Position numbers and translations under genes: made by a program. Shown in pieces: positions 21,437 through 60,968 of a stretch of 64,000 nucleotides of DNA. The first letter of the stretch is position 1; each line of letters begins with the position of its first letter. The notes under the pieces are model-generated. The model saw only the letters and a list, made by a program, of their open reading frames with translations. It searched no databases and was not told where the DNA came from. Where the stretch lies: the sequence record MK250019.1. One strand, written 5' to 3'.

Positions 21437-21488
21437 AATTATTTAAATATTATTAGTTAAAATATTTAATATATTTATTAGTTATAAA

Positions 21489-21517
21489 TAGACAATATCA
21501 ATGTTTATAACTATAAT
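21489..21517 (+). promoter_or_regulatory. Sigma70-like promoter (class II)
   Basis: TAGACA-N17-TATAAT, 28 nt upstream of ATG 21545. Confidence 0.65.
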
Positions 21518-34191: not shown

Positions 34192-34887
34192 TTATAAGTT
34201 AGATAAGACTAAACCTAAACAATATTCGTTATTAATATCACAAATAAATTTATTAAGTTGACCTTTTAACATTTCAGTGTTTATTTCAAATTCTTCTAAT
34301 ATCTCTTTTTCTTTCTTTATAGTATTAATATCTGTTTCTTTCAAATAACTATAAGTATCTTTAGTCTTAAAATTAATATTAGATATTGTATCATTTCTGA
34401 TAGAATTTATAATTAACATTACAGATAACTCATATGTATTTTCATTTAATGCTGAACCATGATAACCACATATACCTTTATTTTTCAGTTCAAAAAATAC
34501 AGGGCCATAACAGTATTTTCCTTCATGTACAATAGTTCCCAATGATTTCAAACCAAATGTCTTACATATATTAAACTTCTTATCAAGATAATCATTAAAT
34601 AATTTATTAATAAACATCATCTGATATGAAATAAAGGTATCAGCATTTAATTCTAATTTAAAATGTGTCTTATCTAAAATATCATACATTAAATCTTGTA
34701 TATTCATATCACCTAATTCTTCTTTATATAAAGATGATAAACACATATATAATCTATGTAATGTTTCTTTAATATCATAATTAATATGAACATTTTTCAA
34801 TTTATTTTCATAATAATTTAGAATTGATTTATTAATTAATGTTGCTGCATTATCAATAAAATATTTTCTATTTTCATCATATGTCAT
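34192..34887 (-). CDS. Hypothetical protein
   Basis: Clean ORF. Confidence 0.7.
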   Translation of the reverse strand: MTYDENRKYFIDNAATLINKSILNYYENKLKNVHINYDIKETLHRLYMCLSSLYKEELGDMNIQDLMYDILDKTHFKLELNADTFISYQMMFINKLFNDYLDKKFNICKTFGLKSLGTIVHEGKYCYGPVFFELKNKGICGYHGSALNENTYELSVMLIINSIRNDTISNINFKTKDTYSYLKETDINTIKKEKEILEEFEINTEMLKGQLNKFICDINNEYCLGLVLSNL

Positions 34888-34900
34888 ATAATTTAAAAAA

Positions 34901-35098
34901 TTATTTTTCTTTCATTCGTCTTAAGATATGTTTAGGTTCTGTATAATAAAAATAATCTTTTGTATTATCATCGATAATATTAAGATTGTATAATGCTTGT
35001 GAAAACCTTATATCTTTATATGTAGTGAGATATTTCTTCAGTATATCTAATATTTCCATATTAGCCTTATATCTCTCAAATGTTTCTTTATCTTCCAT
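34901..35098 (-). CDS. Hypothetical protein
   Basis: Clean ORF containing RFSQAL. Confidence 0.65.
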   Translation of the reverse strand: MEDKETFERYKANMEILDILKKYLTTYKDIRFSQALYNLNIIDDNTKDYFYYTEPKHILRRMKEK

Positions 35099-35140
35099 TT
35101 AAAATAACGGATTAATTTTTATTTCATCTGTTTTAGAATA

Positions 35141-35497
35141 TTAAGTTACATTTAATCTCAATGTTTCATTTAACCATTCTGCAATTAAATGTCTATGACA
35201 AAATTCATCTGGTTTTTCAAAACAACATAATGCGCAGTCATTTCCATTAGATATAAATTTAATTCTATCTACAAATATAGATGGATCTTTAAATAAAGAT
35301 AAAACTTCATTTTTATATCGTTTTCTGAATTCCTGATGATTAGATCTACAGTTATTTAATATATCAGGTGTAGGAGCAATTGCTATTAAATTAGGTCCAT
35401 GAAAATCTTTTGGTGGATAACAGCATATTCCTATTGGAACTATATTATTCTCTTTTAATTTCTTTAGATTTCCAAAATAACTCGTATATATCTTCAT
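35141..35497 (-). CDS. DUF488-like protein
   Basis: IYTSYF, LCCFEKPDEFCHRHLIAEWL. Confidence 0.7.
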   Translation of the reverse strand: MKIYTSYFGNLKKLKENNIVPIGICCYPPKDFHGPNLIAIAPTPDILNNCRSNHQEFRKRYKNEVLSLFKDPSIFVDRIKFISNGNDCALCCFEKPDEFCHRHLIAEWLNETLRLNVT

Positions 35498-35500
35498 ATA

Positions 35501-35716
35501 TTATTTAAAAATATCTTCTAATTTTTTATATTCATCTTTTGATATATCATATTTAACAACTGAAGATGAATGAGCAGAACTCAAAGTATTACAAGTATCT
35601 ATATGGTAAGAATTATCATATCTATCAAGATAAAAACGTACTATACATGAAATATTAATATAACCGGCACTTTTTGTATATATAAATTTTGTCTTATTAT
35701 TCTTCAACTTTATCAT
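35501..35716 (-). CDS. Hypothetical protein
   Basis: Clean ORF. Confidence 0.6.
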   Translation of the reverse strand: MIKLKNNKTKFIYTKSAGYINISCIVRFYLDRYDNSYHIDTCNTLSSAHSSSVVKYDISKDEYKKLEDIFK

Positions 35717-35776
35717 AGTATAAAAACATTATTATATATTTTTTATATAATATTAAATTGATTTTGTTTAATATAA

Positions 35777-36100
35777 ATGGCAGGTTTTGTATATCTTATT
35801 TGTAACCCTGATTAGAATTGTTATAAAATCGGAGTAACAAGGGATTTAGCATAGAAACGATTAAAATAGTTATAGACAGGAAATTCATCAAAATTACATA
35901 TAGTTCATTCTGTATATAGTGAATATCCATTTAGGTTAGAATCTATGTTACATAAAACATTTGATTCAAAACGTTCTGAAGGTGAATGGTTTAATTTAGA
36001 ATAGAAGGATGTAATTAATTTTAAAGATATATGTAATGAAAAAATTAATATTATTAATATTATGAAAGATAATCCATTCTTTAATAAAGATTTAAAATGA
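35777..36100 (+). CDS. T5orf172/MUG113-like GIY-YIG-superfamily protein, 107 aa, 5 in-frame TAG (absent from the ORF track)
   Basis: GFVYLI...YKIGVT...KRLK(TAG)L(TAG)TGN...ESMLHKTF...GEWF; ends at TGA 36098. Confidence 0.88.
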
Positions 36101-36102
36101 AT

Positions 36103-36140
36103 AAAGGTGATATAAGAATTCAATAACTTATATCACCTTT
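36103..36140. terminator. Bidirectional intrinsic terminator
   Basis: 14-bp stem aaaggtgatataag/cttatatcaccttt between convergent genes. Confidence 0.9.
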
Positions 36141-36145
36141 ATTTT

Positions 36146-36412
36146 TTACTTGTTTAATTCTTTATTTAATTCAATCATTTCATCTTCAGGTAATTCATGT
36201 AAATTAATGAAATTATCTATATCTAATAATCCATATTTCAGCATATATGCAATTGTCATTCTTACTGCATAATCTGCTACATCATATGTAGATGCAATTT
36301 CCATATTAGATAAATCTGGATTTTGTAATGTTATTGTTGAAATATTATCTGATAAATCATTAATTGCATCCTTTAATGAATTTATCTGGTTATTTGTTAA
36401 TGTATTACTCAT
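36146..36412 (-). CDS. Hypothetical protein
   Basis: Clean ORF. Confidence 0.7.
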   Translation of the reverse strand: MSNTLTNNQINSLKDAINDLSDNISTITLQNPDLSNMEIASTYDVADYAVRMTIAYMLKYGLLDIDNFINLHELPEDEMIELNKELNK

Positions 36413-36436
36413 TTTATTTTTTATTATAATTTAAAT

Positions 36437-36475
36437 AAAAAAGATGTTATTAAATTGTGAAAATTTAATAACATC
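36437..36475 (-). terminator. Intrinsic terminator closing the ncRNA A/B unit
   Basis: 13-bp stem gatgttattaaat/atttaataacatc followed by a U6 tract on the minus strand. Confidence 0.8.
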
Positions 36476-36529
36476 AAGAACTTATGAAAAACTGCTTAAA
36501 AATATTCTATTCTTTTTATGGAATATGTT

Positions 36530-36945
36530 TTAGATTTTTGTACAAACATAAGGTTCTGCCCCTTATGATTCATTTTAACGTTTGCTCGTTATAATGAATG
36601 TTCATACTGAACTTTGTTATGTCCATGAGGACAAATGGCTGAGAACTTGACCAACACCGACTCTCTATGCTGTAACGTTGGAGTTACATGTTCACACAAC
36701 TCTTATTTCTAAGAGGTAGAGAGCATACCCACGACTTTTGTGAAAAATCGTAAACTCTTACTTGATAGGTTTCATAGAAATTCATTTCATACCAACTTCC
36801 TTGGAAGGATTCAATATGTCCCCACATTTAGCACGATACTACTTTTACTATTCTCATGTCTTTCCTTGCGGTACTCGAATCATGTCTACATATTTCAGTA
36901 GAATAAGGGTATTTTAACCACCAAGTGTCGCACACTTTTGCTTTT
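36530..36945 (-). ncRNA. Candidate structured ncRNA B (about 410 nt), family unidentified
   Basis: About 40% GC in 36601-36720. Nested hairpins include ctctta-GAAA-taagag, cc-GCAA-gg, ctctcta/tagagag, tgtaac/gttaca, cataagg/ccttatg and ctac-TGAAATAT-gtag. No ORF. Confidence 0.7.
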
Positions 36946-37009
36946 GTATAATTTATATACTTAAATAATGTAATCCTAATATTATTATTCTTTATATATT
37001 ATATTTGAT

Positions 37010-37510
37010 TAGACTTGAAAGACGAGGTGCGACCAATAGCATTTCTTCCTTTTGAGAAGAATCCACTAAATCGCCTTTCTGAATTTACATTGCACCATAC
37101 AATCATAATTCTACTCTTATAACTTAACTACATATTTCAGTAGTAATCTTACCATTTCTGAACAAGTTACCAGCTTGCATGGATTATTTGGTTTATAATC
37201 CATATAAGATTCATTATAACAATTAATATCAGCACTGGGAATTGGTATTCCGATCACCGAATATCCATAAACATAAACCTATTGTATTACTACTCACATC
37301 AGTTGTATATTTCACTTCCAATGTATTTGAACTTCATCTCAGAAAGTTTTCCCTTGATTTCCCATTCAAACAGGTTATTTATGTTTGGTTTTCTGTAGAA
37401 TGCTCATTATTCATAAACATCAACCAACATGTCTACTGTTGATTTTTATTACATCACTGCTTTATCCTTAACTCCACCGAAACCATGGATTCATATTTCA
37501 AAGAACTCAT
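37010..37510 (-). ncRNA. Candidate structured ncRNA A (about 500 nt), family unidentified
   Basis: Hairpins atggatta/taatccat, ttcttc/gaagaa, tattc/gaata and ctac-TGAAATAT-gtag. Begins with the boxA-like element, downstream of a promoter. Confidence 0.62.
37495..37506 (-). promoter_or_regulatory. boxA-like antitermination element
   Basis: GTTCTTTGAAAT, identical to 31433-31444. Confidence 0.5.
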
Positions 37511-37546
37511 TTAAAATGAAATAATCTTCAAATTAAATTGTTATTA

Positions 37547-37575
37547 TTTATATAACCTATAATTTAAAAAGTCTA
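37547..37575 (-). promoter_or_regulatory. Sigma70-like promoter (class II) for the ncRNA A/B unit
   Basis: TAGACT-N17-TATAAA, about 40 nt upstream of the boxA-like element. Confidence 0.6.
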
Positions 37576-37764
37576 TATTTTAATCAAAAAATATTTTATT
37601 TTTTTAATTACTTTATTAACTATATGTGTCTTTATCTTCTTTTAATTAATAAAATATGATTTAATTAAAAACTTAATAATTTAGATTATCAATATGTTTC
37701 AAATTTAAATATTATATATGATAATAGAATAATTGTCTATATTTTATAGAAAAAATTTAAAAAA

Positions 37765-37941
37765 TTATTTTAAACAATATTCTAAATCAAAAATAAAACT
37801 CCCTAATAATTCAATTTTATGTCTAATAAGTTCTGCTTCAAAATTAAATTTATGTTCTGAACAAAATGATAATTCAGATAATAATTTATTTCTTTCAGTT
37901 TTCCACTTATTTATTAAATCATCTTTAGATAACTCTTCCAT
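37765..37941 (-). CDS. Small hypothetical protein (58 aa, below the track cutoff)
   Basis: MEELSKDDLINKWKTERNKLL...EYCLK-TAA, co-oriented with its neighbours. Confidence 0.6.
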   Translation of the reverse strand: MEELSKDDLINKWKTERNKLLSELSFCSEHKFNFEAELIRHKIELLGSFIFDLEYCLK

Positions 37942-37966
37942 AATACATTTTCTTCAATTTATTTCA

Positions 37967-38242
37967 TTATTTAATTGTAACTTTGATTTTTGAATCAGTT
38001 ACTTTGCCATTAACAACAGTATTTATAGTATCAATAGAAATAGAATCAAGGCTCTTAATAAACATATTAGGTATCTTTACAATTGTATCTACACTATCTC
38101 TTATCTGAATTGAATCTTTAGTAATATTAATAGTATCATGAATAGGTTTATTATCTGTTACATATCTTGGATTAATCCAAAAATACTGAATAGCAACACC
38201 TACAATAATTCCTATAATAAATGTCCAAAAAATATGTTTCAT
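37967..38242 (-). CDS. Membrane-anchored hypothetical protein
   Basis: N-terminal TM helix followed by a DTI/DSI beta-rich region. Confidence 0.7.
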   Translation of the reverse strand: MKHIFWTFIIGIIVGVAIQYFWINPRYVTDNKPIHDTINITKDSIQIRDSVDTIVKIPNMFIKSLDSISIDTINTVVNGKVTDSKIKVTIK

Positions 38243-38262
38243 TTTATATTATAAATTAAAAA

Positions 38263-38472
38263 TTAAACTTTATTTATTAAATCAACTAAATCATTATATG
38301 TTATCTCTTCATATTTTGTTTTATTTCTACTAATAAAAATAGGTTTATTTAATGATATATTAACATCTTTTAATATCTCATTCTTATCATTCTCTAAAAC
38401 ATACCAATGTGTTTGTTTATCTAATATTTTTCCAGATCTAGTCTGCCCTAATCCCAACCGTACTATTGTCAT
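38263..38472 (-). CDS. Hypothetical protein
   Basis: Clean ORF. Confidence 0.65.
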   Translation of the reverse strand: MTIVRLGLGQTRSGKILDKQTHWYVLENDKNEILKDVNISLNKPIFISRNKTKYEEITYNDLVDLINKV

Positions 38473-38599
38473 ATGAATATAATATTTAATATATTTTTAA
38501 TATTTGAAAAAATCTACCTTCAAAAAAGAAAGAACCAAAGAAAAATAATTTTTAATCAATATTTAATTAGATTTATAAATTAAATTTTTTACATATATT

Positions 38600-38960
38600 A
38601 TATATAAATCTATCACAANNNNNNNNNNNNNNNNNNNNNNNNNNNNNNTGTTTTACCAAAAAGTCTACATTTATCTTAATTATTTTTTAATCGGATTAAA
38701 AAATAATTTATAACTAATTAATAATCAATAGATTAAATAAAATATTTTTCATATATATAAATTAATATAAAATAAAAATTCAGATCTAATTATCAAAAAT
38801 TAAATCTGAATTTAACTAATATAAAAAATTTAAATATTATATATAATATCTATCTCAANNNNNNNNNNNNNNNNNNNNNNNNNNNNNNNGTTTTGAGAAA
38901 AAGTCTACATTTTTACAAAATATTTTTAATAAATTCTAAAAATAATTTATAACTAATTGA
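38600..38960. repeat. Degenerate 240-bp-period direct repeat in an extremely AT-rich intergenic region, each copy containing an N-run
   Basis: tctatc(a/t)caa-Ns-ttt...aaaaagtctacattt...aaaaataatttataactaatt occurs at about 38608 and 38848. Confidence 0.65.
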
Positions 38961-38967
38961 TATATAA

Positions 38968-39678
38968 TTATTTAAGGTATTCCATTACATCATTAAATGC
39001 TTTATTATATTCATCTTCTGATGAACTCTCTAATTTTTCATAATATATACGTTCCTGTAATATCTCTTTAATATCTGCATATTCTCGTTTAATATTATAT
39101 ACAGGTTCACCATCAGACCAAGTCTTAACAATAACTCGAGTAATATCTAAATATCCTTTATATACATTATCTAACCCATGAATTTTAATATATTCATATA
39201 TTGGCATAAATGTTTCTTTTATCAATGATTCTTCATCATCTTTTGAAAGATTCAATTCTTTAATTTGATTTAGTTTTTCTGTATATTCTGCTTTATGAAA
39301 TTTAAGCCTTAATGTTCGATAATGTATATATGATGTCGGAACAACAGGAACAATATTTGTTTCAGGAAAATCTGAACATAAAGGATAAACTTGATCTAAT
39401 ACCCAAATAATATATATGTTATTTACATTAAATTGATATAGATTATAAGATTGACGTTTATCATTACTTAGTTCCCATAGTTCTTCACTATATGGCATTA
39501 CTGCAATATAAGTTTCATTCCATATAGGATTATCTAATTTATCGATATGAATACTTCGTTCATTCGATCTATCTTTATTGATACAATATAATTTTACATC
39601 ATCAGGAACAAGAATTTTATCTACATATGAATCATATGCAAATCTCCAAATTTTATATTCTTTATAGTTTTTATTCAT
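38968..39678 (-). CDS. Hypothetical protein
   Basis: Clean ORF. Confidence 0.75.
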   Translation of the reverse strand: MNKNYKEYKIWRFAYDSYVDKILVPDDVKLYCINKDRSNERSIHIDKLDNPIWNETYIAVMPYSEELWELSNDKRQSYNLYQFNVNNIYIIWVLDQVYPLCSDFPETNIVPVVPTSYIHYRTLRLKFHKAEYTEKLNQIKELNLSKDDEESLIKETFMPIYEYIKIHGLDNVYKGYLDITRVIVKTWSDGEPVYNIKREYADIKEILQERIYYEKLESSSEDEYNKAFNDVMEYLK

Positions 39679-59864: not shown

Positions 59865-59917
59865 CTATATAATTATAGTAATATTTAAATTAATTATTAT
59901 AATAATTAAAAATAAAA

Positions 59918-59947
59918 AAGTCTATAACCATATAAAGTTATAGACTT
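59918..59947. terminator. Intrinsic terminator
   Basis: 11-bp stem aagtctataac/gttatagactt with an A-tract (U-tract on the minus strand). Confidence 0.8.
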
Positions 59948-59954
59948 AAATTTA

Positions 59955-60968
59955 TTATGCTTGTTTTTTATTTAATGCATAAAAATAATTCTTTAATTCA
60001 GAAAATGAAAAGAATTCTAAATAATTTAAACCATGTTTTTCTGCTATTTCTCTTTTCATAATATCTCTAGTTGTCCAAACATTAATAGCTGAAATATAAT
60101 AATCTTTTTCTTTCGATCTCTTTTTCCATAAATTTAATTTCTTAATGTCGTCGGGATTATTTTTATCAAAACCATGTTTACCATGTGTCCAATGAAAATT
60201 ACATTCAATATATAAATCATTATCTGCAATATAAAAATCACAAGCAAAAGGATATTCTTCTGATTTATATTGTCTTTTAATATCAGTATATATTGTTTTT
60301 AAAAGTTCATATACTTTATCTTCTTCCTTTGAACATGTATGTGTTTTATGTTTCGTTTTAGATTCATGTATTTTGTCTATTGTTGATTGTAATTGTGTAG
60401 TNNNNNNNNNNNNNNNNNNNNNNNNNNNNNNNNCTTTTCTTTTTTCTTTTATAACTTCACATTTACCAACATTATCAACACCATACTTTTCTAGTACAGT
60501 TTCTTTACGTTTTTCCTTTACATAGTCACTGGCTAATGCCATTTCAGTACCATAACGTTCTAAATTCGTGGCTTTAATTTTATCCCATACTTTCTATGAT
60601 TTTGCAGGATTATCTACACCATAACGTTCAATATTTGTTTTCTTTATCTTTTCTTTAACACTTTCTAATTGAAATGGATTTGCAACTCCATATTTTTTAA
60701 TCATAGATTGCTTTTTCAGACCATATATACATTTAGAATTACCACAACTTTTGTGATATTTATAACCGTCACGTTTACATGGTTTTCCACAAATATGACA
60801 TCTTGGTACATCATTAGTATCATTTAATATACATAACAGTTTATCGATAATATCCATATCAGATTTATCGATAAACTGTGTATTTAAATATTCAATAATA
60901 TTAACAGGTATCTTATTTTTATTTAATGAATGCTCCTTATAATACTATTTTATATATTCATTATTCAT
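59955..60968 (-). CDS. Putative homing endonuclease: Cys-rich Zn finger, KYGVxNP repeats and a C-terminal PD-(D/E)XK (Vsr/DUF559-like) nuclease; 337 aa, 2 in-frame TAG
   Basis: Joins 60594-60857 and 59955-60542 via TAG 60594 and extends to ATG 60968. CHICGKPC...CGNSKC, [KR]YGVxN repeats, CDFYI..DLYIECNFHWTHG. Contains an N-run at 60402-60433. Confidence 0.78.

What the first reader, a model, noticed from the sequence alone, without database searches (positions are those of the whole stretch)
36437..37575. Self-contained ORF-free transcription unit: promoter, boxA-like leader, two large structured RNAs, terminator
On the minus strand the order is: TAGACT-N17-TATAAA promoter (37547-75), GTTCTTTGAAAT (37495-506), about 500 nt of structured RNA A, an AT-rich spacer of about 65 nt, about 410 nt of structured RNA B, and a 13-bp terminator with a U6 tract. 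GC rises to about 40% (25/60 and 23/60 in 36601-36720), well above the AT-rich coding background. Hairpins tile the region and several end in GNRA tetraloops. This layout resembles a small rRNA-style operon of phage ncRNAs. I cannot match the RNAs to tRNA, tmRNA, RNase P or an intron. Large phage ncRNAs such as ROOL and GOLLD are the closest conceptual class, but I have not established identity. This may be an undescribed RNA system.
Basis: partly seen in the sequence, partly recalled or inferred. Interest (0 to 1): 0.9.

Follow-up and report, generated by a model that had tools for sequence, protein, structure and literature searches.

The report
Divergent GOLLD RNA in Lak megaphage
The ORF-free, highly expressed ~1-kb unit is one RNA, a divergent member of the known phage GOLLD family (a cage-forming giant non-coding RNA) carried by the Prevotella megaphage Lak-A2, and not two new RNAs.

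Summary
The window is Prevotella phage Lak-A2 (MK250019.1). "RNA A – AT spacer – RNA B" is a single GOLLD RNA: a variable 5' domain, a 72-nt AU-rich linker, and the conserved 3' domain.

- **Rfam match:** the GOLLD model (RF02032) matches full-length (1-416) across the spacer at 65 bits, E 2.6e-16. This is below Rfam's 150-bit cut-off, so a default scan misses it.
- **Family continuity:** 38 viral records give full-length matches running from 305 down to 50 bits.
- **Structure:** the 3' helices and a pseudoknot covary strongly.
- **Linker:** the nearest non-Lak relative has a tRNA in the linker, a known GOLLD trait.
- **Expression:** metatranscriptome contigs from three studies lie only on the unit (k-mer depth 228-440 against 0-4 on the flanks). 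They cross the spacer.

Lak-specific features are tandem promoter-like motifs, its own terminator, no nearby tRNAs, a 95-nt 3' extension, and a 5'-domain type shared only with one clade of large phages. The "boxA" and "two RNAs / new system" readings are not supported. Searchable papers do not report GOLLD in Lak phages. This is a new member of a known kind.

The parts
37712..37740 (-). Upstream promoter-like motif ATAGACA-N17-TATAAT
   Evidence: One search lists it as an 11/12 sigma-70-like match. Searches show a second ATAGAC-N16-19-TATAA motif lying 116-168 nt upstream of the proximal one in Lak-A2, Lak-B1 and G030, although the sequence between them differs. It may explain why the X2 RNA contig reaches 37598. 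That it acts as a promoter is inferred.
37547..37576 (-). Proximal promoter-like block ATAGACT-N17-TATAAA (TATAAT in Lak-B)
   Evidence: Searches give the coordinates. One search shows the block is nearly invariant in Lak-A2, Lak-B1 and G001 while the upstream sequence is unalignable. One search finds the motif 4 times in the window against 0.91 expected. Its match to consensus is not above chance on its own.
37080..37510 (-).
   Evidence: It is homologous to the 5' regions of G012 (E 3.6e-11) and G038 (E 8e-43 by profile). In the 15-sequence alignment 94.7% of cells are paired against 36-47% for slid partners, and 45 pairs are compensatory against a shuffle maximum of 32. Lak itself keeps only some of the helices. 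MFE z is -2.4.
37016..37079 (-). Pre-linker hairpin with a UCAAAAG loop (Rfam GOLLD model positions 1-65)
   Evidence: The alignment has high posterior probability here. Lak forms 18 of 18 pairs, 3 of them compensatory relative to its relatives. The gut-phage group shares this hairpin.
36944..37015 (-).
   Evidence: It aligns to the unpaired AU-rich stretch of the Rfam model. The same position in G012 holds a tRNA-Ser. Contigs from RNA libraries cross it in X2, X9 and X13.
36636..36943 (-). Conserved GOLLD 3' domain (AAGCAAAAGU ... UCUCAGCC)
   Evidence: It matches the Rfam model through position 416. nhmmer detects homology to the gut-phage GOLLD-like RNAs at E 6e-16 to 1e-4. Motif columns are invariant across 30 sequences. 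The subfamily fold has 66 pairs, 88.9% paired, with 53 covarying. The pseudoknot AUACCC/GGGUAU is 93-97% paired.
36541..36635 (-). Lak-specific 3' extension with four hairpins
   Evidence: It is conserved between Lak-A and Lak-B up to GTACAAA at about 36541. It folds into 4 hairpins with z -3.8. The gut group and canonical GOLLDs lack it; they run straight into a terminator or a tRNA. RNA contigs end at 36563-36591.
36437..36475 (-). Intrinsic terminator: 14-bp hairpin plus a U6 tract
   Evidence: One search gives dG -12.8 and z -4.2. Lak-B has a 15-bp hairpin of different sequence followed by a T run at the same place. The consensus scan misses it because the stem has only 2 G-C pairs.

Best explanation
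This is the GOLLD RNA gene of Prevotella megaphage Lak-A2. One primary transcript of about 1.0-1.1 kb is made from the minus strand. It probably starts at one or two phage promoter-like motifs (ATAGAC-N17-TATAA) and ends at an intrinsic terminator. The conserved RNA of about 970 nt (37510-36541) has the GOLLD layout: a lineage-variable 5' domain ending in a UCAAAAG-loop hairpin, an unstructured AU-rich linker, and the family-wide conserved 3' domain with its long-range helix and pseudoknot. Lak adds a 95-nt extension of four hairpins at the 3' end.

By homology with GOLLD env-38, whose cryo-EM structure is a 14-mer cage, it most likely folds into two separate 3D domains and self-assembles into a multimeric RNA cage with the linker inside. 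It accumulates to levels far above the neighbouring mRNAs during infection.

Shown here: family identity, domain layout, conserved structure, abundance in RNA libraries, and absence of coding potential. Inferred: the transcription start and end points, cage assembly, and any role in sequestering or scaffolding. The family's biological function is still unknown.
For: - The GOLLD covariance model matches full-length (1-416) at E 2.6e-16 and 65.2 bits, across the spacer.
- Each of two Lak-type records of 416 and 554 kb, equally AT-rich, gives exactly one GOLLD match, at the homologous RNA locus, so composition is not producing spurious hits.
- Full-length matches in 38 viral records run in a continuum from 305 to 50 bits.
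- nhmmer detects direct 3'-domain homology to intermediate members.
- Sequence motifs are invariant across 30 sequences.
- 18 of 23 RNAalifold pairs show double-sided changes across canonical-to-Lak sequences.
- The subfamily fold reproduces the Rfam helices, with 88.9% of cells paired against 34-46% slid, and 280 compensatory cells against a shuffle maximum of 112.
- The pseudoknot is conserved.
- The published GOLLD architecture of a 420-nt 5' region, variable linker and 413-nt 3' region matches this unit.
- The nearest relative has a tRNA in its linker.
- RNA-library contigs from three studies lie only on 36563-37598, at k-mer depth 66-440 against 0-4 on the flanks, and they cross the linker.
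- There are no ORFs under any plausible code.
- The terminator is conserved in function with a different sequence in Lak-B.
Against: - The score is below Rfam's curated 150-bit threshold. One central hairpin of the model (about positions 250-264) is deleted or replaced in Lak.
- No tRNA lies within the 64-kb window, whereas GOLLDs are typically next to tRNA arrays.
- Only part of the Lak 5' domain aligns to its relatives.
- The consensus folds were derived from the same alignments that were used for counting, so the covariation controls are partly circular.
- Logan contigs cannot show strand, transcript ends or single-molecule continuity.
- Cage assembly was not tested.
Confidence: 0.88

Rival explanations
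1. The unit yields two separate functional RNAs. The primary transcript is cut in or near the spacer, and the 5' and 3' halves act or assemble as separate molecules. This remains compatible with GOLLD ancestry.
For: - In X9 the 3' part and the 5' part are on different contigs at different k-mer depths (440 against 228), and one contig carries a 36983-to-37493 joint.
- In relatives with a tRNA in the linker, tRNA processing would be expected to sever the two halves. This is inference from general knowledge of RNase P and RNase Z.
- In the cryo-EM structure the two regions form separate 3D domains joined by few contacts.
Against: - One 929-nt X2 contig spans the 5' part, the linker and much of the 3' part.
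- The X9 and X13 contigs also cross the whole linker and break inside the pre-linker hairpin, not in the spacer.
- The joined form is absent from metagenome contigs.
- The joint has 4 nt of microhomology, which is typical of reverse-transcriptase template switching (general knowledge).
Confidence: 0.12
2. It is a new RNA class unrelated to GOLLD, and the sub-threshold covariance-model hit comes from AU-rich composition and a few short motifs.
For: The score of 65 bits is less than half the Rfam cut-off. The bias term is 18.9 bits. The AU-rich linker contributes to the alignment.
Against: - E is 2.6e-16 with a full-length alignment.
- There is only one hit in each of two AT-rich Lak-type genomes of about 0.4-0.55 Mb.
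- The score continuum runs through intermediates that nhmmer links directly to Lak.
- Helices and a pseudoknot shared with canonical members above 170 bits covary.
- The three-part architecture is the same, and a relative has a tRNA in its linker.
Confidence: 0.02
3. The region is a protein-coding gene under an unusual code, or a long 5' leader or riboswitch-like regulator of the downstream 88-aa gene (36146-36412).
For: Lak phages do show a signal of TAG reassignment in this window: the total length of long ORFs rises from 13,996 to 18,047 aa when TAG is read as sense. The 88-aa ORF starts 25 nt after the terminator.
Against: - Every frame carries 15-33 stop codons across the region. The longest open stretch is 95 codons or fewer under table 11, TAG=sense or TGA=sense.
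- A conserved terminator separates the RNA from the downstream ORF.
- RNA-library depth falls from hundreds to about 0 before the ORF.
Confidence: 0.01

Closest known systems
GOLLD RNA (Rfam RF02032; Weinberg et al. 2009; env-38 cryo-EM structure, Kretsch et al. Nature 2025, PMC12286853)
   Same: - The covariance model matches full-length.
- The layout is the same: a 5' domain, a variable linker and a conserved 3' domain.
- The motifs AAGCAAAAGU, CGCAAGG, GUGUGA/GUGGA and UCUCAG are shared.
- The same helices and pseudoknot covary.
- It has the pre-linker hairpin with a UCAAAAG loop.
- It is phage-encoded, about 1 kb long, and abundant in RNA libraries.
   Different: - It scores 65 bits against the 150-bit gathering score.
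- One central model hairpin is replaced.
- There is no tRNA beside or inside it.
- It is a stand-alone unit with its own tandem promoter-like motifs and intrinsic terminator.
- It has an extra 95-nt 3' extension.
- Its 5'-domain type is shared only with the G012/G038 clade.
- Its host lineage is Prevotella (Bacteroidota), through a 540-kb megaphage.
Sub-threshold GOLLD-like RNAs of 80-180 kb gut phage contigs and other huge phages (found here: L127-L140, G012, G038, G042)
   Same: The 3' domain is about 64-71% identical to Lak and alignable by nhmmer. The helices are the same, and the pre-linker hairpin is shared. G012 and G038 also share the Lak-type 5' domain.
   Different: These copies are flanked by tRNAs on both sides or hold one in the linker. 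They end directly in a terminator or a tRNA after UCUCAGCY. They score 70-99 bits.
ROOL RNA (the other phage cage-forming giant RNA)
   Same: Conceptually similar: a large ornate phage ncRNA with a disordered internal linker and very high abundance.
   Different: No ROOL match appeared at E up to 10 in the region. Its sequence and fold are reported to be unrelated to GOLLD.

Membership tests
GOLLD (RF02032) | Covariance-model score at or above Rfam's gathering threshold (150 bits) | tested here: not met
   The score is 65.2 bits, E 2.6e-16, with a full-length 1-416 alignment, and there is no hit in gathering mode. The threshold is an operational cut-off. Statistical homology is clear, and scores run in a continuum from 305 to 50 bits.
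GOLLD (RF02032) | Conserved 3'-domain secondary structure, supported by covariation | tested here: met
   18 of 23 pairs show double-sided changes across 30 sequences that include members above 170 bits. The subfamily fold matches the Rfam helices, with 88.9% of cells paired and 53 of 66 pairs covarying against a shuffle maximum of 45.
GOLLD (RF02032) | Conserved 3'-domain sequence motifs | tested here: met
   AAGCAAAAGU, CGCAAGG, the GUG and the CU of the 3'-terminal UCUCAG motif are invariant columns in the 30-sequence alignment, and Lak carries all of them.
GOLLD (RF02032) | Bipartite architecture: a less conserved 5' region of about 420 nt, a variable linker, and a universally conserved 3' region of about 410 nt | tested here: met
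   Lak has 495 nt (431 nt plus the 64-nt pre-linker hairpin), a 72-nt linker, and 308 nt plus a 95-nt extension. The 5' part is detectable only in a narrow clade, while the 3' part is detectable family-wide.
GOLLD (RF02032) | Long-range or pseudoknot pairing in the 3' domain | tested here: met
   AUACCC/GGGUAU is 97.5% paired in the subfamily and 93.3% paired across all 30 sequences, against 26-47% for slid partners, with 3-5 pair types at five of the six positions. It crosses the covarying ACUUGGUGG/CCUAUCAAGU helix.
GOLLD (RF02032) | Encoded by phages or prophages | tested here: met
   The region is 100% identical to Prevotella phage Lak-A2 and is present in all 15 Lak records.
GOLLD (RF02032) | Adjacent to tRNA genes or arrays, or holding a tRNA in the linker (frequent, not universal) | tested here: not met
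   The 64-kb window has no tRNA, and the Lak-B and G030 copies have none nearby. The feature is met in the nearest relatives: a tRNA-Ser in the G012 linker, a tRNA-Met upstream of G038, and tRNAs on both sides of the gut-group copies.
GOLLD (RF02032) | High RNA abundance associated with phage infection | tested here: inconclusive
   Metatranscriptome contigs from three studies are confined to the unit at k-mer depth 66-440 against 0-4 on the flanks. This shows abundance relative to neighbours. Strand, timing and induction at lysis cannot be read from contigs.
GOLLD (RF02032) | Self-assembly into a homo-14-mer cage | not testable with these tools
   This is known for env-38 only. It needs in-vitro transcription followed by mass photometry or cryo-EM.
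ROOL | Match to the Rfam ROOL covariance model | tested here: not met
   ROOL is not among the matches at E up to 10 in 36300-37700 or in the gathering scan of the whole window.
rRNA-style operon with a boxA antitermination leader | A boxA-like element conserved in the leader of homologous units | tested here: not met
   GTTCTTTGAAAT is conserved between Lak-A and Lak-B. In the G012 clade it aligns to GGCUUCGGCUGAAAAC, inside the RNA's 5' domain. The X9 and X13 RNA contigs begin just downstream of it. Function was not tested.

The most novel reading that the evidence does not exclude
Lak GOLLD may be processed in the linker, with its 5' domain ligated into a 511-nt circle (36983 joined to 37493, as in one high-depth gut metatranscriptome contig). 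In that case the cage would be built from separate or circular pieces. More broadly, a tRNA-free GOLLD with its own promoter in the largest known gut phages would show that the family's function does not depend on co-transcription with tRNAs.
Probability: 0.08. Interest if true: 0.7.

Novelty: new member of a known kind. Interest (0 to 1): 0.4.

Why it matters
GOLLD is one of the few natural RNAs known to build a protein-free cage, and its biological role is unknown. This result places a GOLLD in Lak megaphages (about 540 kb, Prevotella hosts). It also uncovers a large clade of gut-phage and huge-phage GOLLDs that Rfam's 150-bit cut-off misses, which widens the family's known host and phage range. 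Together these sequences offer many new entries for redefining the model.

The Lak copy stands alone, with its own promoter-like motifs, its own terminator and no tRNAs. It is by far the most abundant transcript of its neighbourhood in gut and wastewater metatranscriptomes. That argues the RNA's function does not require linkage to tRNA genes. For the scan, this candidate for an "undescribed RNA system" resolves to a known family.

Tried and rejected
- **Rfam at gathering thresholds:** the whole-window scan found nothing. Only the permissive scan revealed GOLLD. The other sub-threshold hits (snoRNAs, KRAS 3'UTR, sroH; E 0.9-6) were rejected as chance.
- **tRNA and tmRNA:** the scan of the window was empty.
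- **ORFs under alternative codes:** none were found. The longer frames seen under 'TAA=sense' or single-stop codes were rejected as artefacts of AT-rich sequence.
- **Own-assembly search:** the assembly is not held. One handle list was too long and the call was re-sent.
- **Named relatives of the gut group:** blastn of a gut-group element against GenBank phages found no match, so that clade could not be named.
- **Neighbouring proteins:** PHROGs and Pfam gave only hypothetical proteins and one DUF488, so context offers no functional hint.
- **The circular junction:** its specific 24-mer has no match in metagenome contigs, so the circular form has no independent support.
- **Promoter and terminator consensus scan:** promoter-like hits are at chance level, and the real terminator is missed because its stem has few G-C pairs.
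- **Lak 5' domain against canonical GOLLD 5' regions:** nothing was detected by sequence profile beyond the pre-linker hairpin.
- **Literature:** no paper links GOLLD with Lak, megaphages or huge phages. The published GOLLD alignment header contains no Lak, Prevotella or MK2500 name.
- **Not attempted:** covariance models of the full 3' domain, because a model of about 310 positions exceeds the calibration limit.
Full report
**Identity of the window and check of the observation.**
The 1,139-nt stretch is 100% identical to Prevotella phage Lak-A2 (MK250019.1, 98437-99575). It is present in all 15 Lak records: 99.4% identical in Lak-C1, 98.7% in Lak-A1 and about 89.4% in Lak-B1 to B9.
- TAGACT (37575-70), a 17-nt spacer, then TATAAA (37552-47).
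- GTTCTTTGAAAT (37506-37495).
- About 495 nt of GC-richer sequence.
- A 72-nt spacer at 12% GC (37015-36944).
- About 400 nt of GC-richer sequence.
- A perfect 14-bp hairpin (36475-36443) followed by U6 (36442-37).

GC is 0.30-0.38 inside the unit and 0.11-0.25 outside it. No reading frame is open for more than 95 codons under table 11, TAG=sense or TGA=sense. Each frame carries 15-33 stops. The terminator hairpin folds at -12.8 kcal/mol with z -4.2. Lak-B has a 15-bp hairpin of different sequence plus a T run at the same place.

**What it is.**
A default Rfam scan of the window finds nothing. A permissive scan of 36300-37700 gives one strong match. The GOLLD model RF02032 aligns over all 416 positions to 37079-36636 on the minus strand, at 65.2 bits and E 2.6e-16, against a gathering score of 150. 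That spacer aligns to the long unpaired AU-rich segment of the model, between a hairpin with a UCAAAAG loop (model 1-65) and the motif AAGCAAAAGU.

The published description of GOLLD env-38 gives a 5' region (1-420), a variable disordered linker that sometimes contains tRNAs, and a universally conserved 3' region (421-833). The two regions form separate 3D domains of a 14-mer cage (Kretsch et al., PMC12286853).

**Is the sub-threshold match real?**
- Composition is not producing spurious hits. The same model gives exactly one match in each of a 416-kb and a 554-kb Lak-type record, both as AT-rich as the window, and the match lies at the homologous RNA locus (59.3 and 67.8 bits).
- A scan of viral contigs for two short motifs shared by the model and Lak (AAGCAAAAGU, a gap, then CGCAAGG) returned more than 108 loci. 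Scoring 45 of their records with the Rfam model gave 38 full-length matches. Scores run in a continuum: 305 to 170 bits (15 above cut-off), then 137, a group of about 15 at 87-99, then 79, 79, 70, 68, 58 and 50. Lak lies at the divergent end of a real family.
- nhmmer with the Lak 3' domain alone detects the intermediate members at E 6e-16 to 1e-4.
- In a 30-sequence alignment running from members above 170 bits down to Lak, the motif columns are invariant. RNAalifold predicts 23 pairs, and 18 of them have double-sided compensatory changes.
- Within the 20 divergent members, the consensus fold reproduces the Rfam helices one for one.
  - 88.9% of cells are paired, against 34-46% when partners are slid.
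  - 53 of 66 pairs have compensatory changes, against a shuffle mean of 37 and maximum of 45.
  - There are 280 compensatory cells, against a shuffle mean of 82 and maximum of 112.
- A further pairing, AUACCC/GGGUAU in Lak, crosses the long-range helix. It is 93-97% paired, with 3-5 pair types at five of its six positions, from canonical GOLLDs through to Lak. Slid partners give 26-47%. This is a conserved pseudoknot-type contact, and it could be intermolecular.

One caveat applies. The folds were derived from the same alignments that were used for counting. The independent check is that they agree with Rfam's consensus.

**The 5' half and the linker.**
The Lak 5' domain has no nhmmer match among the motif-selected loci except in Lak-type records. 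It is homologous over about 470 nt to the 5' region of G012, a 93-kb contig (E 3.6e-11). Through a profile it also matches G038, a 412-kb phage (E 8e-43).

A second motif scan gave 11 viral and 28 metagenome loci of this type. A 15-sequence alignment shows 94.7% of cells paired against 36-47% slid, and 45 compensatory pairs against a shuffle maximum of 32.

Lak itself keeps the pre-linker hairpin (18 of 18 pairs), a GAUGUUUA hairpin (8 of 8), a GNRA-capped hairpin (GUA-GUAA-UAC against GUG-GAAA-CAC) and several sequence blocks. The rest of its 5' domain is lineage-specific. The profile reaches the gut group only at the pre-linker hairpin, and it does not reach canonical GOLLDs at all. This is the known GOLLD pattern of a variable 5' half.

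In G012 the linker holds a tRNA-Ser exactly where Lak has its AU-rich spacer. G038 lies downstream of a tRNA-Met. The gut-group copies are flanked by tRNAs on both sides, and the canonical copies sit in tRNA arrays. The Lak copies have no tRNA nearby.

**Expression.**
Logan contigs of four metatranscriptome runs were laid on 34500-39500.
- X2 (wastewater): one 929-nt contig covers 36670-37598 at k-mer depth 66.
- X9 (gut): contigs cover 36591-37037 (depth 440) and 37008-37493 (depth 228). One flanking gene piece has depth 4.
- X13 (sediment): contigs cover 36563-37061, 37167-37380 and 37328-37478.
- X10 (gut): only a 34-nt piece fitted, so this run was not informative.

Apart from short spurious pieces, the remaining 4 kb of flanks is empty. 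DNA carry-over is therefore excluded, and the RNA is far more abundant than its neighbours' mRNAs. Contigs cross the whole linker in all three informative runs. The breaks lie inside the pre-linker hairpin, not in the spacer. Contigs cannot give strand or true ends. No contig reaches the terminator. Conservation between Lak-A and Lak-B stops at about 36541, so the stable 3' end may lie around 36541-36590. This last point is inference.

**Promoter and the "boxA" label.**
The consensus scan finds sigma-70-like sites at chance frequency (11 against 11.4 expected).
- The block AAAATATAGACTTTTTAAATTAT.G.TTATATAA is nearly invariant between Lak-A and Lak-B, while the sequence upstream of it cannot be aligned.
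- A second ATAGAC-N16-19-TATAA motif lies 116-168 nt upstream in Lak-A2, Lak-B1 and G030, in otherwise different sequence. The motif occurs 4 times in the window against 0.91 expected.

Tandem phage promoters are therefore plausible, and they would explain why the X2 contig reaches 37598. From general knowledge, this motif does not resemble the Bacteroidota -33/-7 promoter consensus, so a phage-directed polymerase specificity may be involved.

GTTCTTTGAAAT is conserved within Lak. In the G012 clade it aligns to GGCUUCGGCUGAAAAC, inside the RNA. It is part of the 5' domain, and nothing supports a role in antitermination.

**Lak-specific features.**
- After UCUCAGCC, where other members run into a terminator or a tRNA, Lak has a conserved 95-nt extension. 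It folds into four hairpins with z -3.8.
- One central hairpin of the Rfam model is replaced.
- The unit is transcriptionally autonomous.
- The neighbouring genes are small hypothetical proteins plus one DUF488 protein, and they give no functional hint.

**Mechanism.**
The most likely picture has three parts, all inferred by homology to env-38. A stand-alone phage gene produces an abundant RNA of about 1 kb. Its 3' and 5' domains fold independently. The RNA oligomerises into a cage with the AU-rich linker inside. What the cage does is unknown for the whole family. Searches from 2025 onward show no functional study. The Lak copy shows that linkage to tRNA genes is not obligatory.

**An unexplained detail.**
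One X9 contig of 541 nt has identical first and last 30 letters. It joins 37493 to 36983, which makes a 511-nt circular unitig comprising the 5' domain plus half of the linker. The joint has 4 nt of microhomology, AATA. This could be a circularised processing product, reverse-transcriptase template switching on a very abundant RNA, or an assembly artefact. The junction-specific 24-mer is absent from metagenome contigs.

**Novelty.**
No paper in the searchable library links GOLLD to Lak, megaphages, huge phages or Prevotella phages. Kretsch et al. ran cmsearch at E 1e-5 or better over GenBank phages. The header of their GOLLD alignment lists every sequence with its organism name. It contains no Lak, Prevotella or MK2500 entry, and Bacteroidota appear only as partial hits of 150-290 nt. 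The gut-group clade has no counterpart among GenBank phages. This is therefore a previously unreported but unsurprising new member of a known family. It comes with a sizeable clade of gut-phage and huge-phage relatives that sit below the Rfam threshold.

Noticed in passing
window 36983-37493 (run X9): A 541-nt metatranscriptome contig at k-mer depth 228 closes on itself, with 37493 joined to 36983 through 4 nt of AATA microhomology. This implies a 511-nt circular or permuted form of the 5' domain plus half the linker. It could equally be template switching or an assembly artefact. The junction 24-mer is absent from metagenome contigs.
   Followed up: partly
window 37712-37740, 37548-37576, 59897-59925 (all minus strand) and 21488-21516 (plus strand): A recurrent ATAGAC-N16-19-TATAA motif occurs 4 times against 0.91 expected. 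It lies in tandem upstream of the GOLLD gene in Lak-A2, Lak-B1 and G030. It is a candidate Lak promoter motif and does not resemble the Bacteroidota host consensus.
   Followed up: partly
loci L127-L140, L005, L011, L016 and others (IMG/VR contigs of 80-180 kb): A large clade of GOLLD-like RNAs scores 79-99 bits, below Rfam's 150-bit cut-off. Each is flanked by tRNAs on both sides. The clade has no blastn counterpart among GenBank phages. Huge phages of 256-412 kb (G042, G038) also carry sub-threshold copies.
   Followed up: partly
L143 1219-1291 (G012) and L142 428-500 (G038): In G012 a tRNA-Ser(UGA) sits inside the GOLLD linker. In G038 a tRNA-Met lies directly upstream of the element, as reported for env-38.
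   Followed up: yes
whole window: Reading TAG as sense raises the total length of ORFs of at least 150 aa from 13,996 to 18,047 aa, with fewer and longer ORFs. This is consistent with the alternative coding reported for Lak phages.
   Followed up: no
window 38619-38648, 38859-38889, 60402-60433: Three runs of N, each 30-32 nt. The first two lie in an extremely AT-rich intergenic stretch with GC 0.085-0.13 at 38600-38900. They were left untouched.
   Followed up: no
window 35141-35497 (minus strand): A 118-aa protein matches DUF488 (PF22751 at 3e-11; PF04343) and phrog_2450. It is the only neighbour with a family match.
   Followed up: no
control genomes: Bacteroides thetaiotaomicron gave a GOLLD model match at E up to 1 but none at E up to 0.001. 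The published GOLLD alignment also lists 183-nt partial hits in Bacteroides genomes. These may be GOLLD fragments in Bacteroidota prophages.
   Followed up: no
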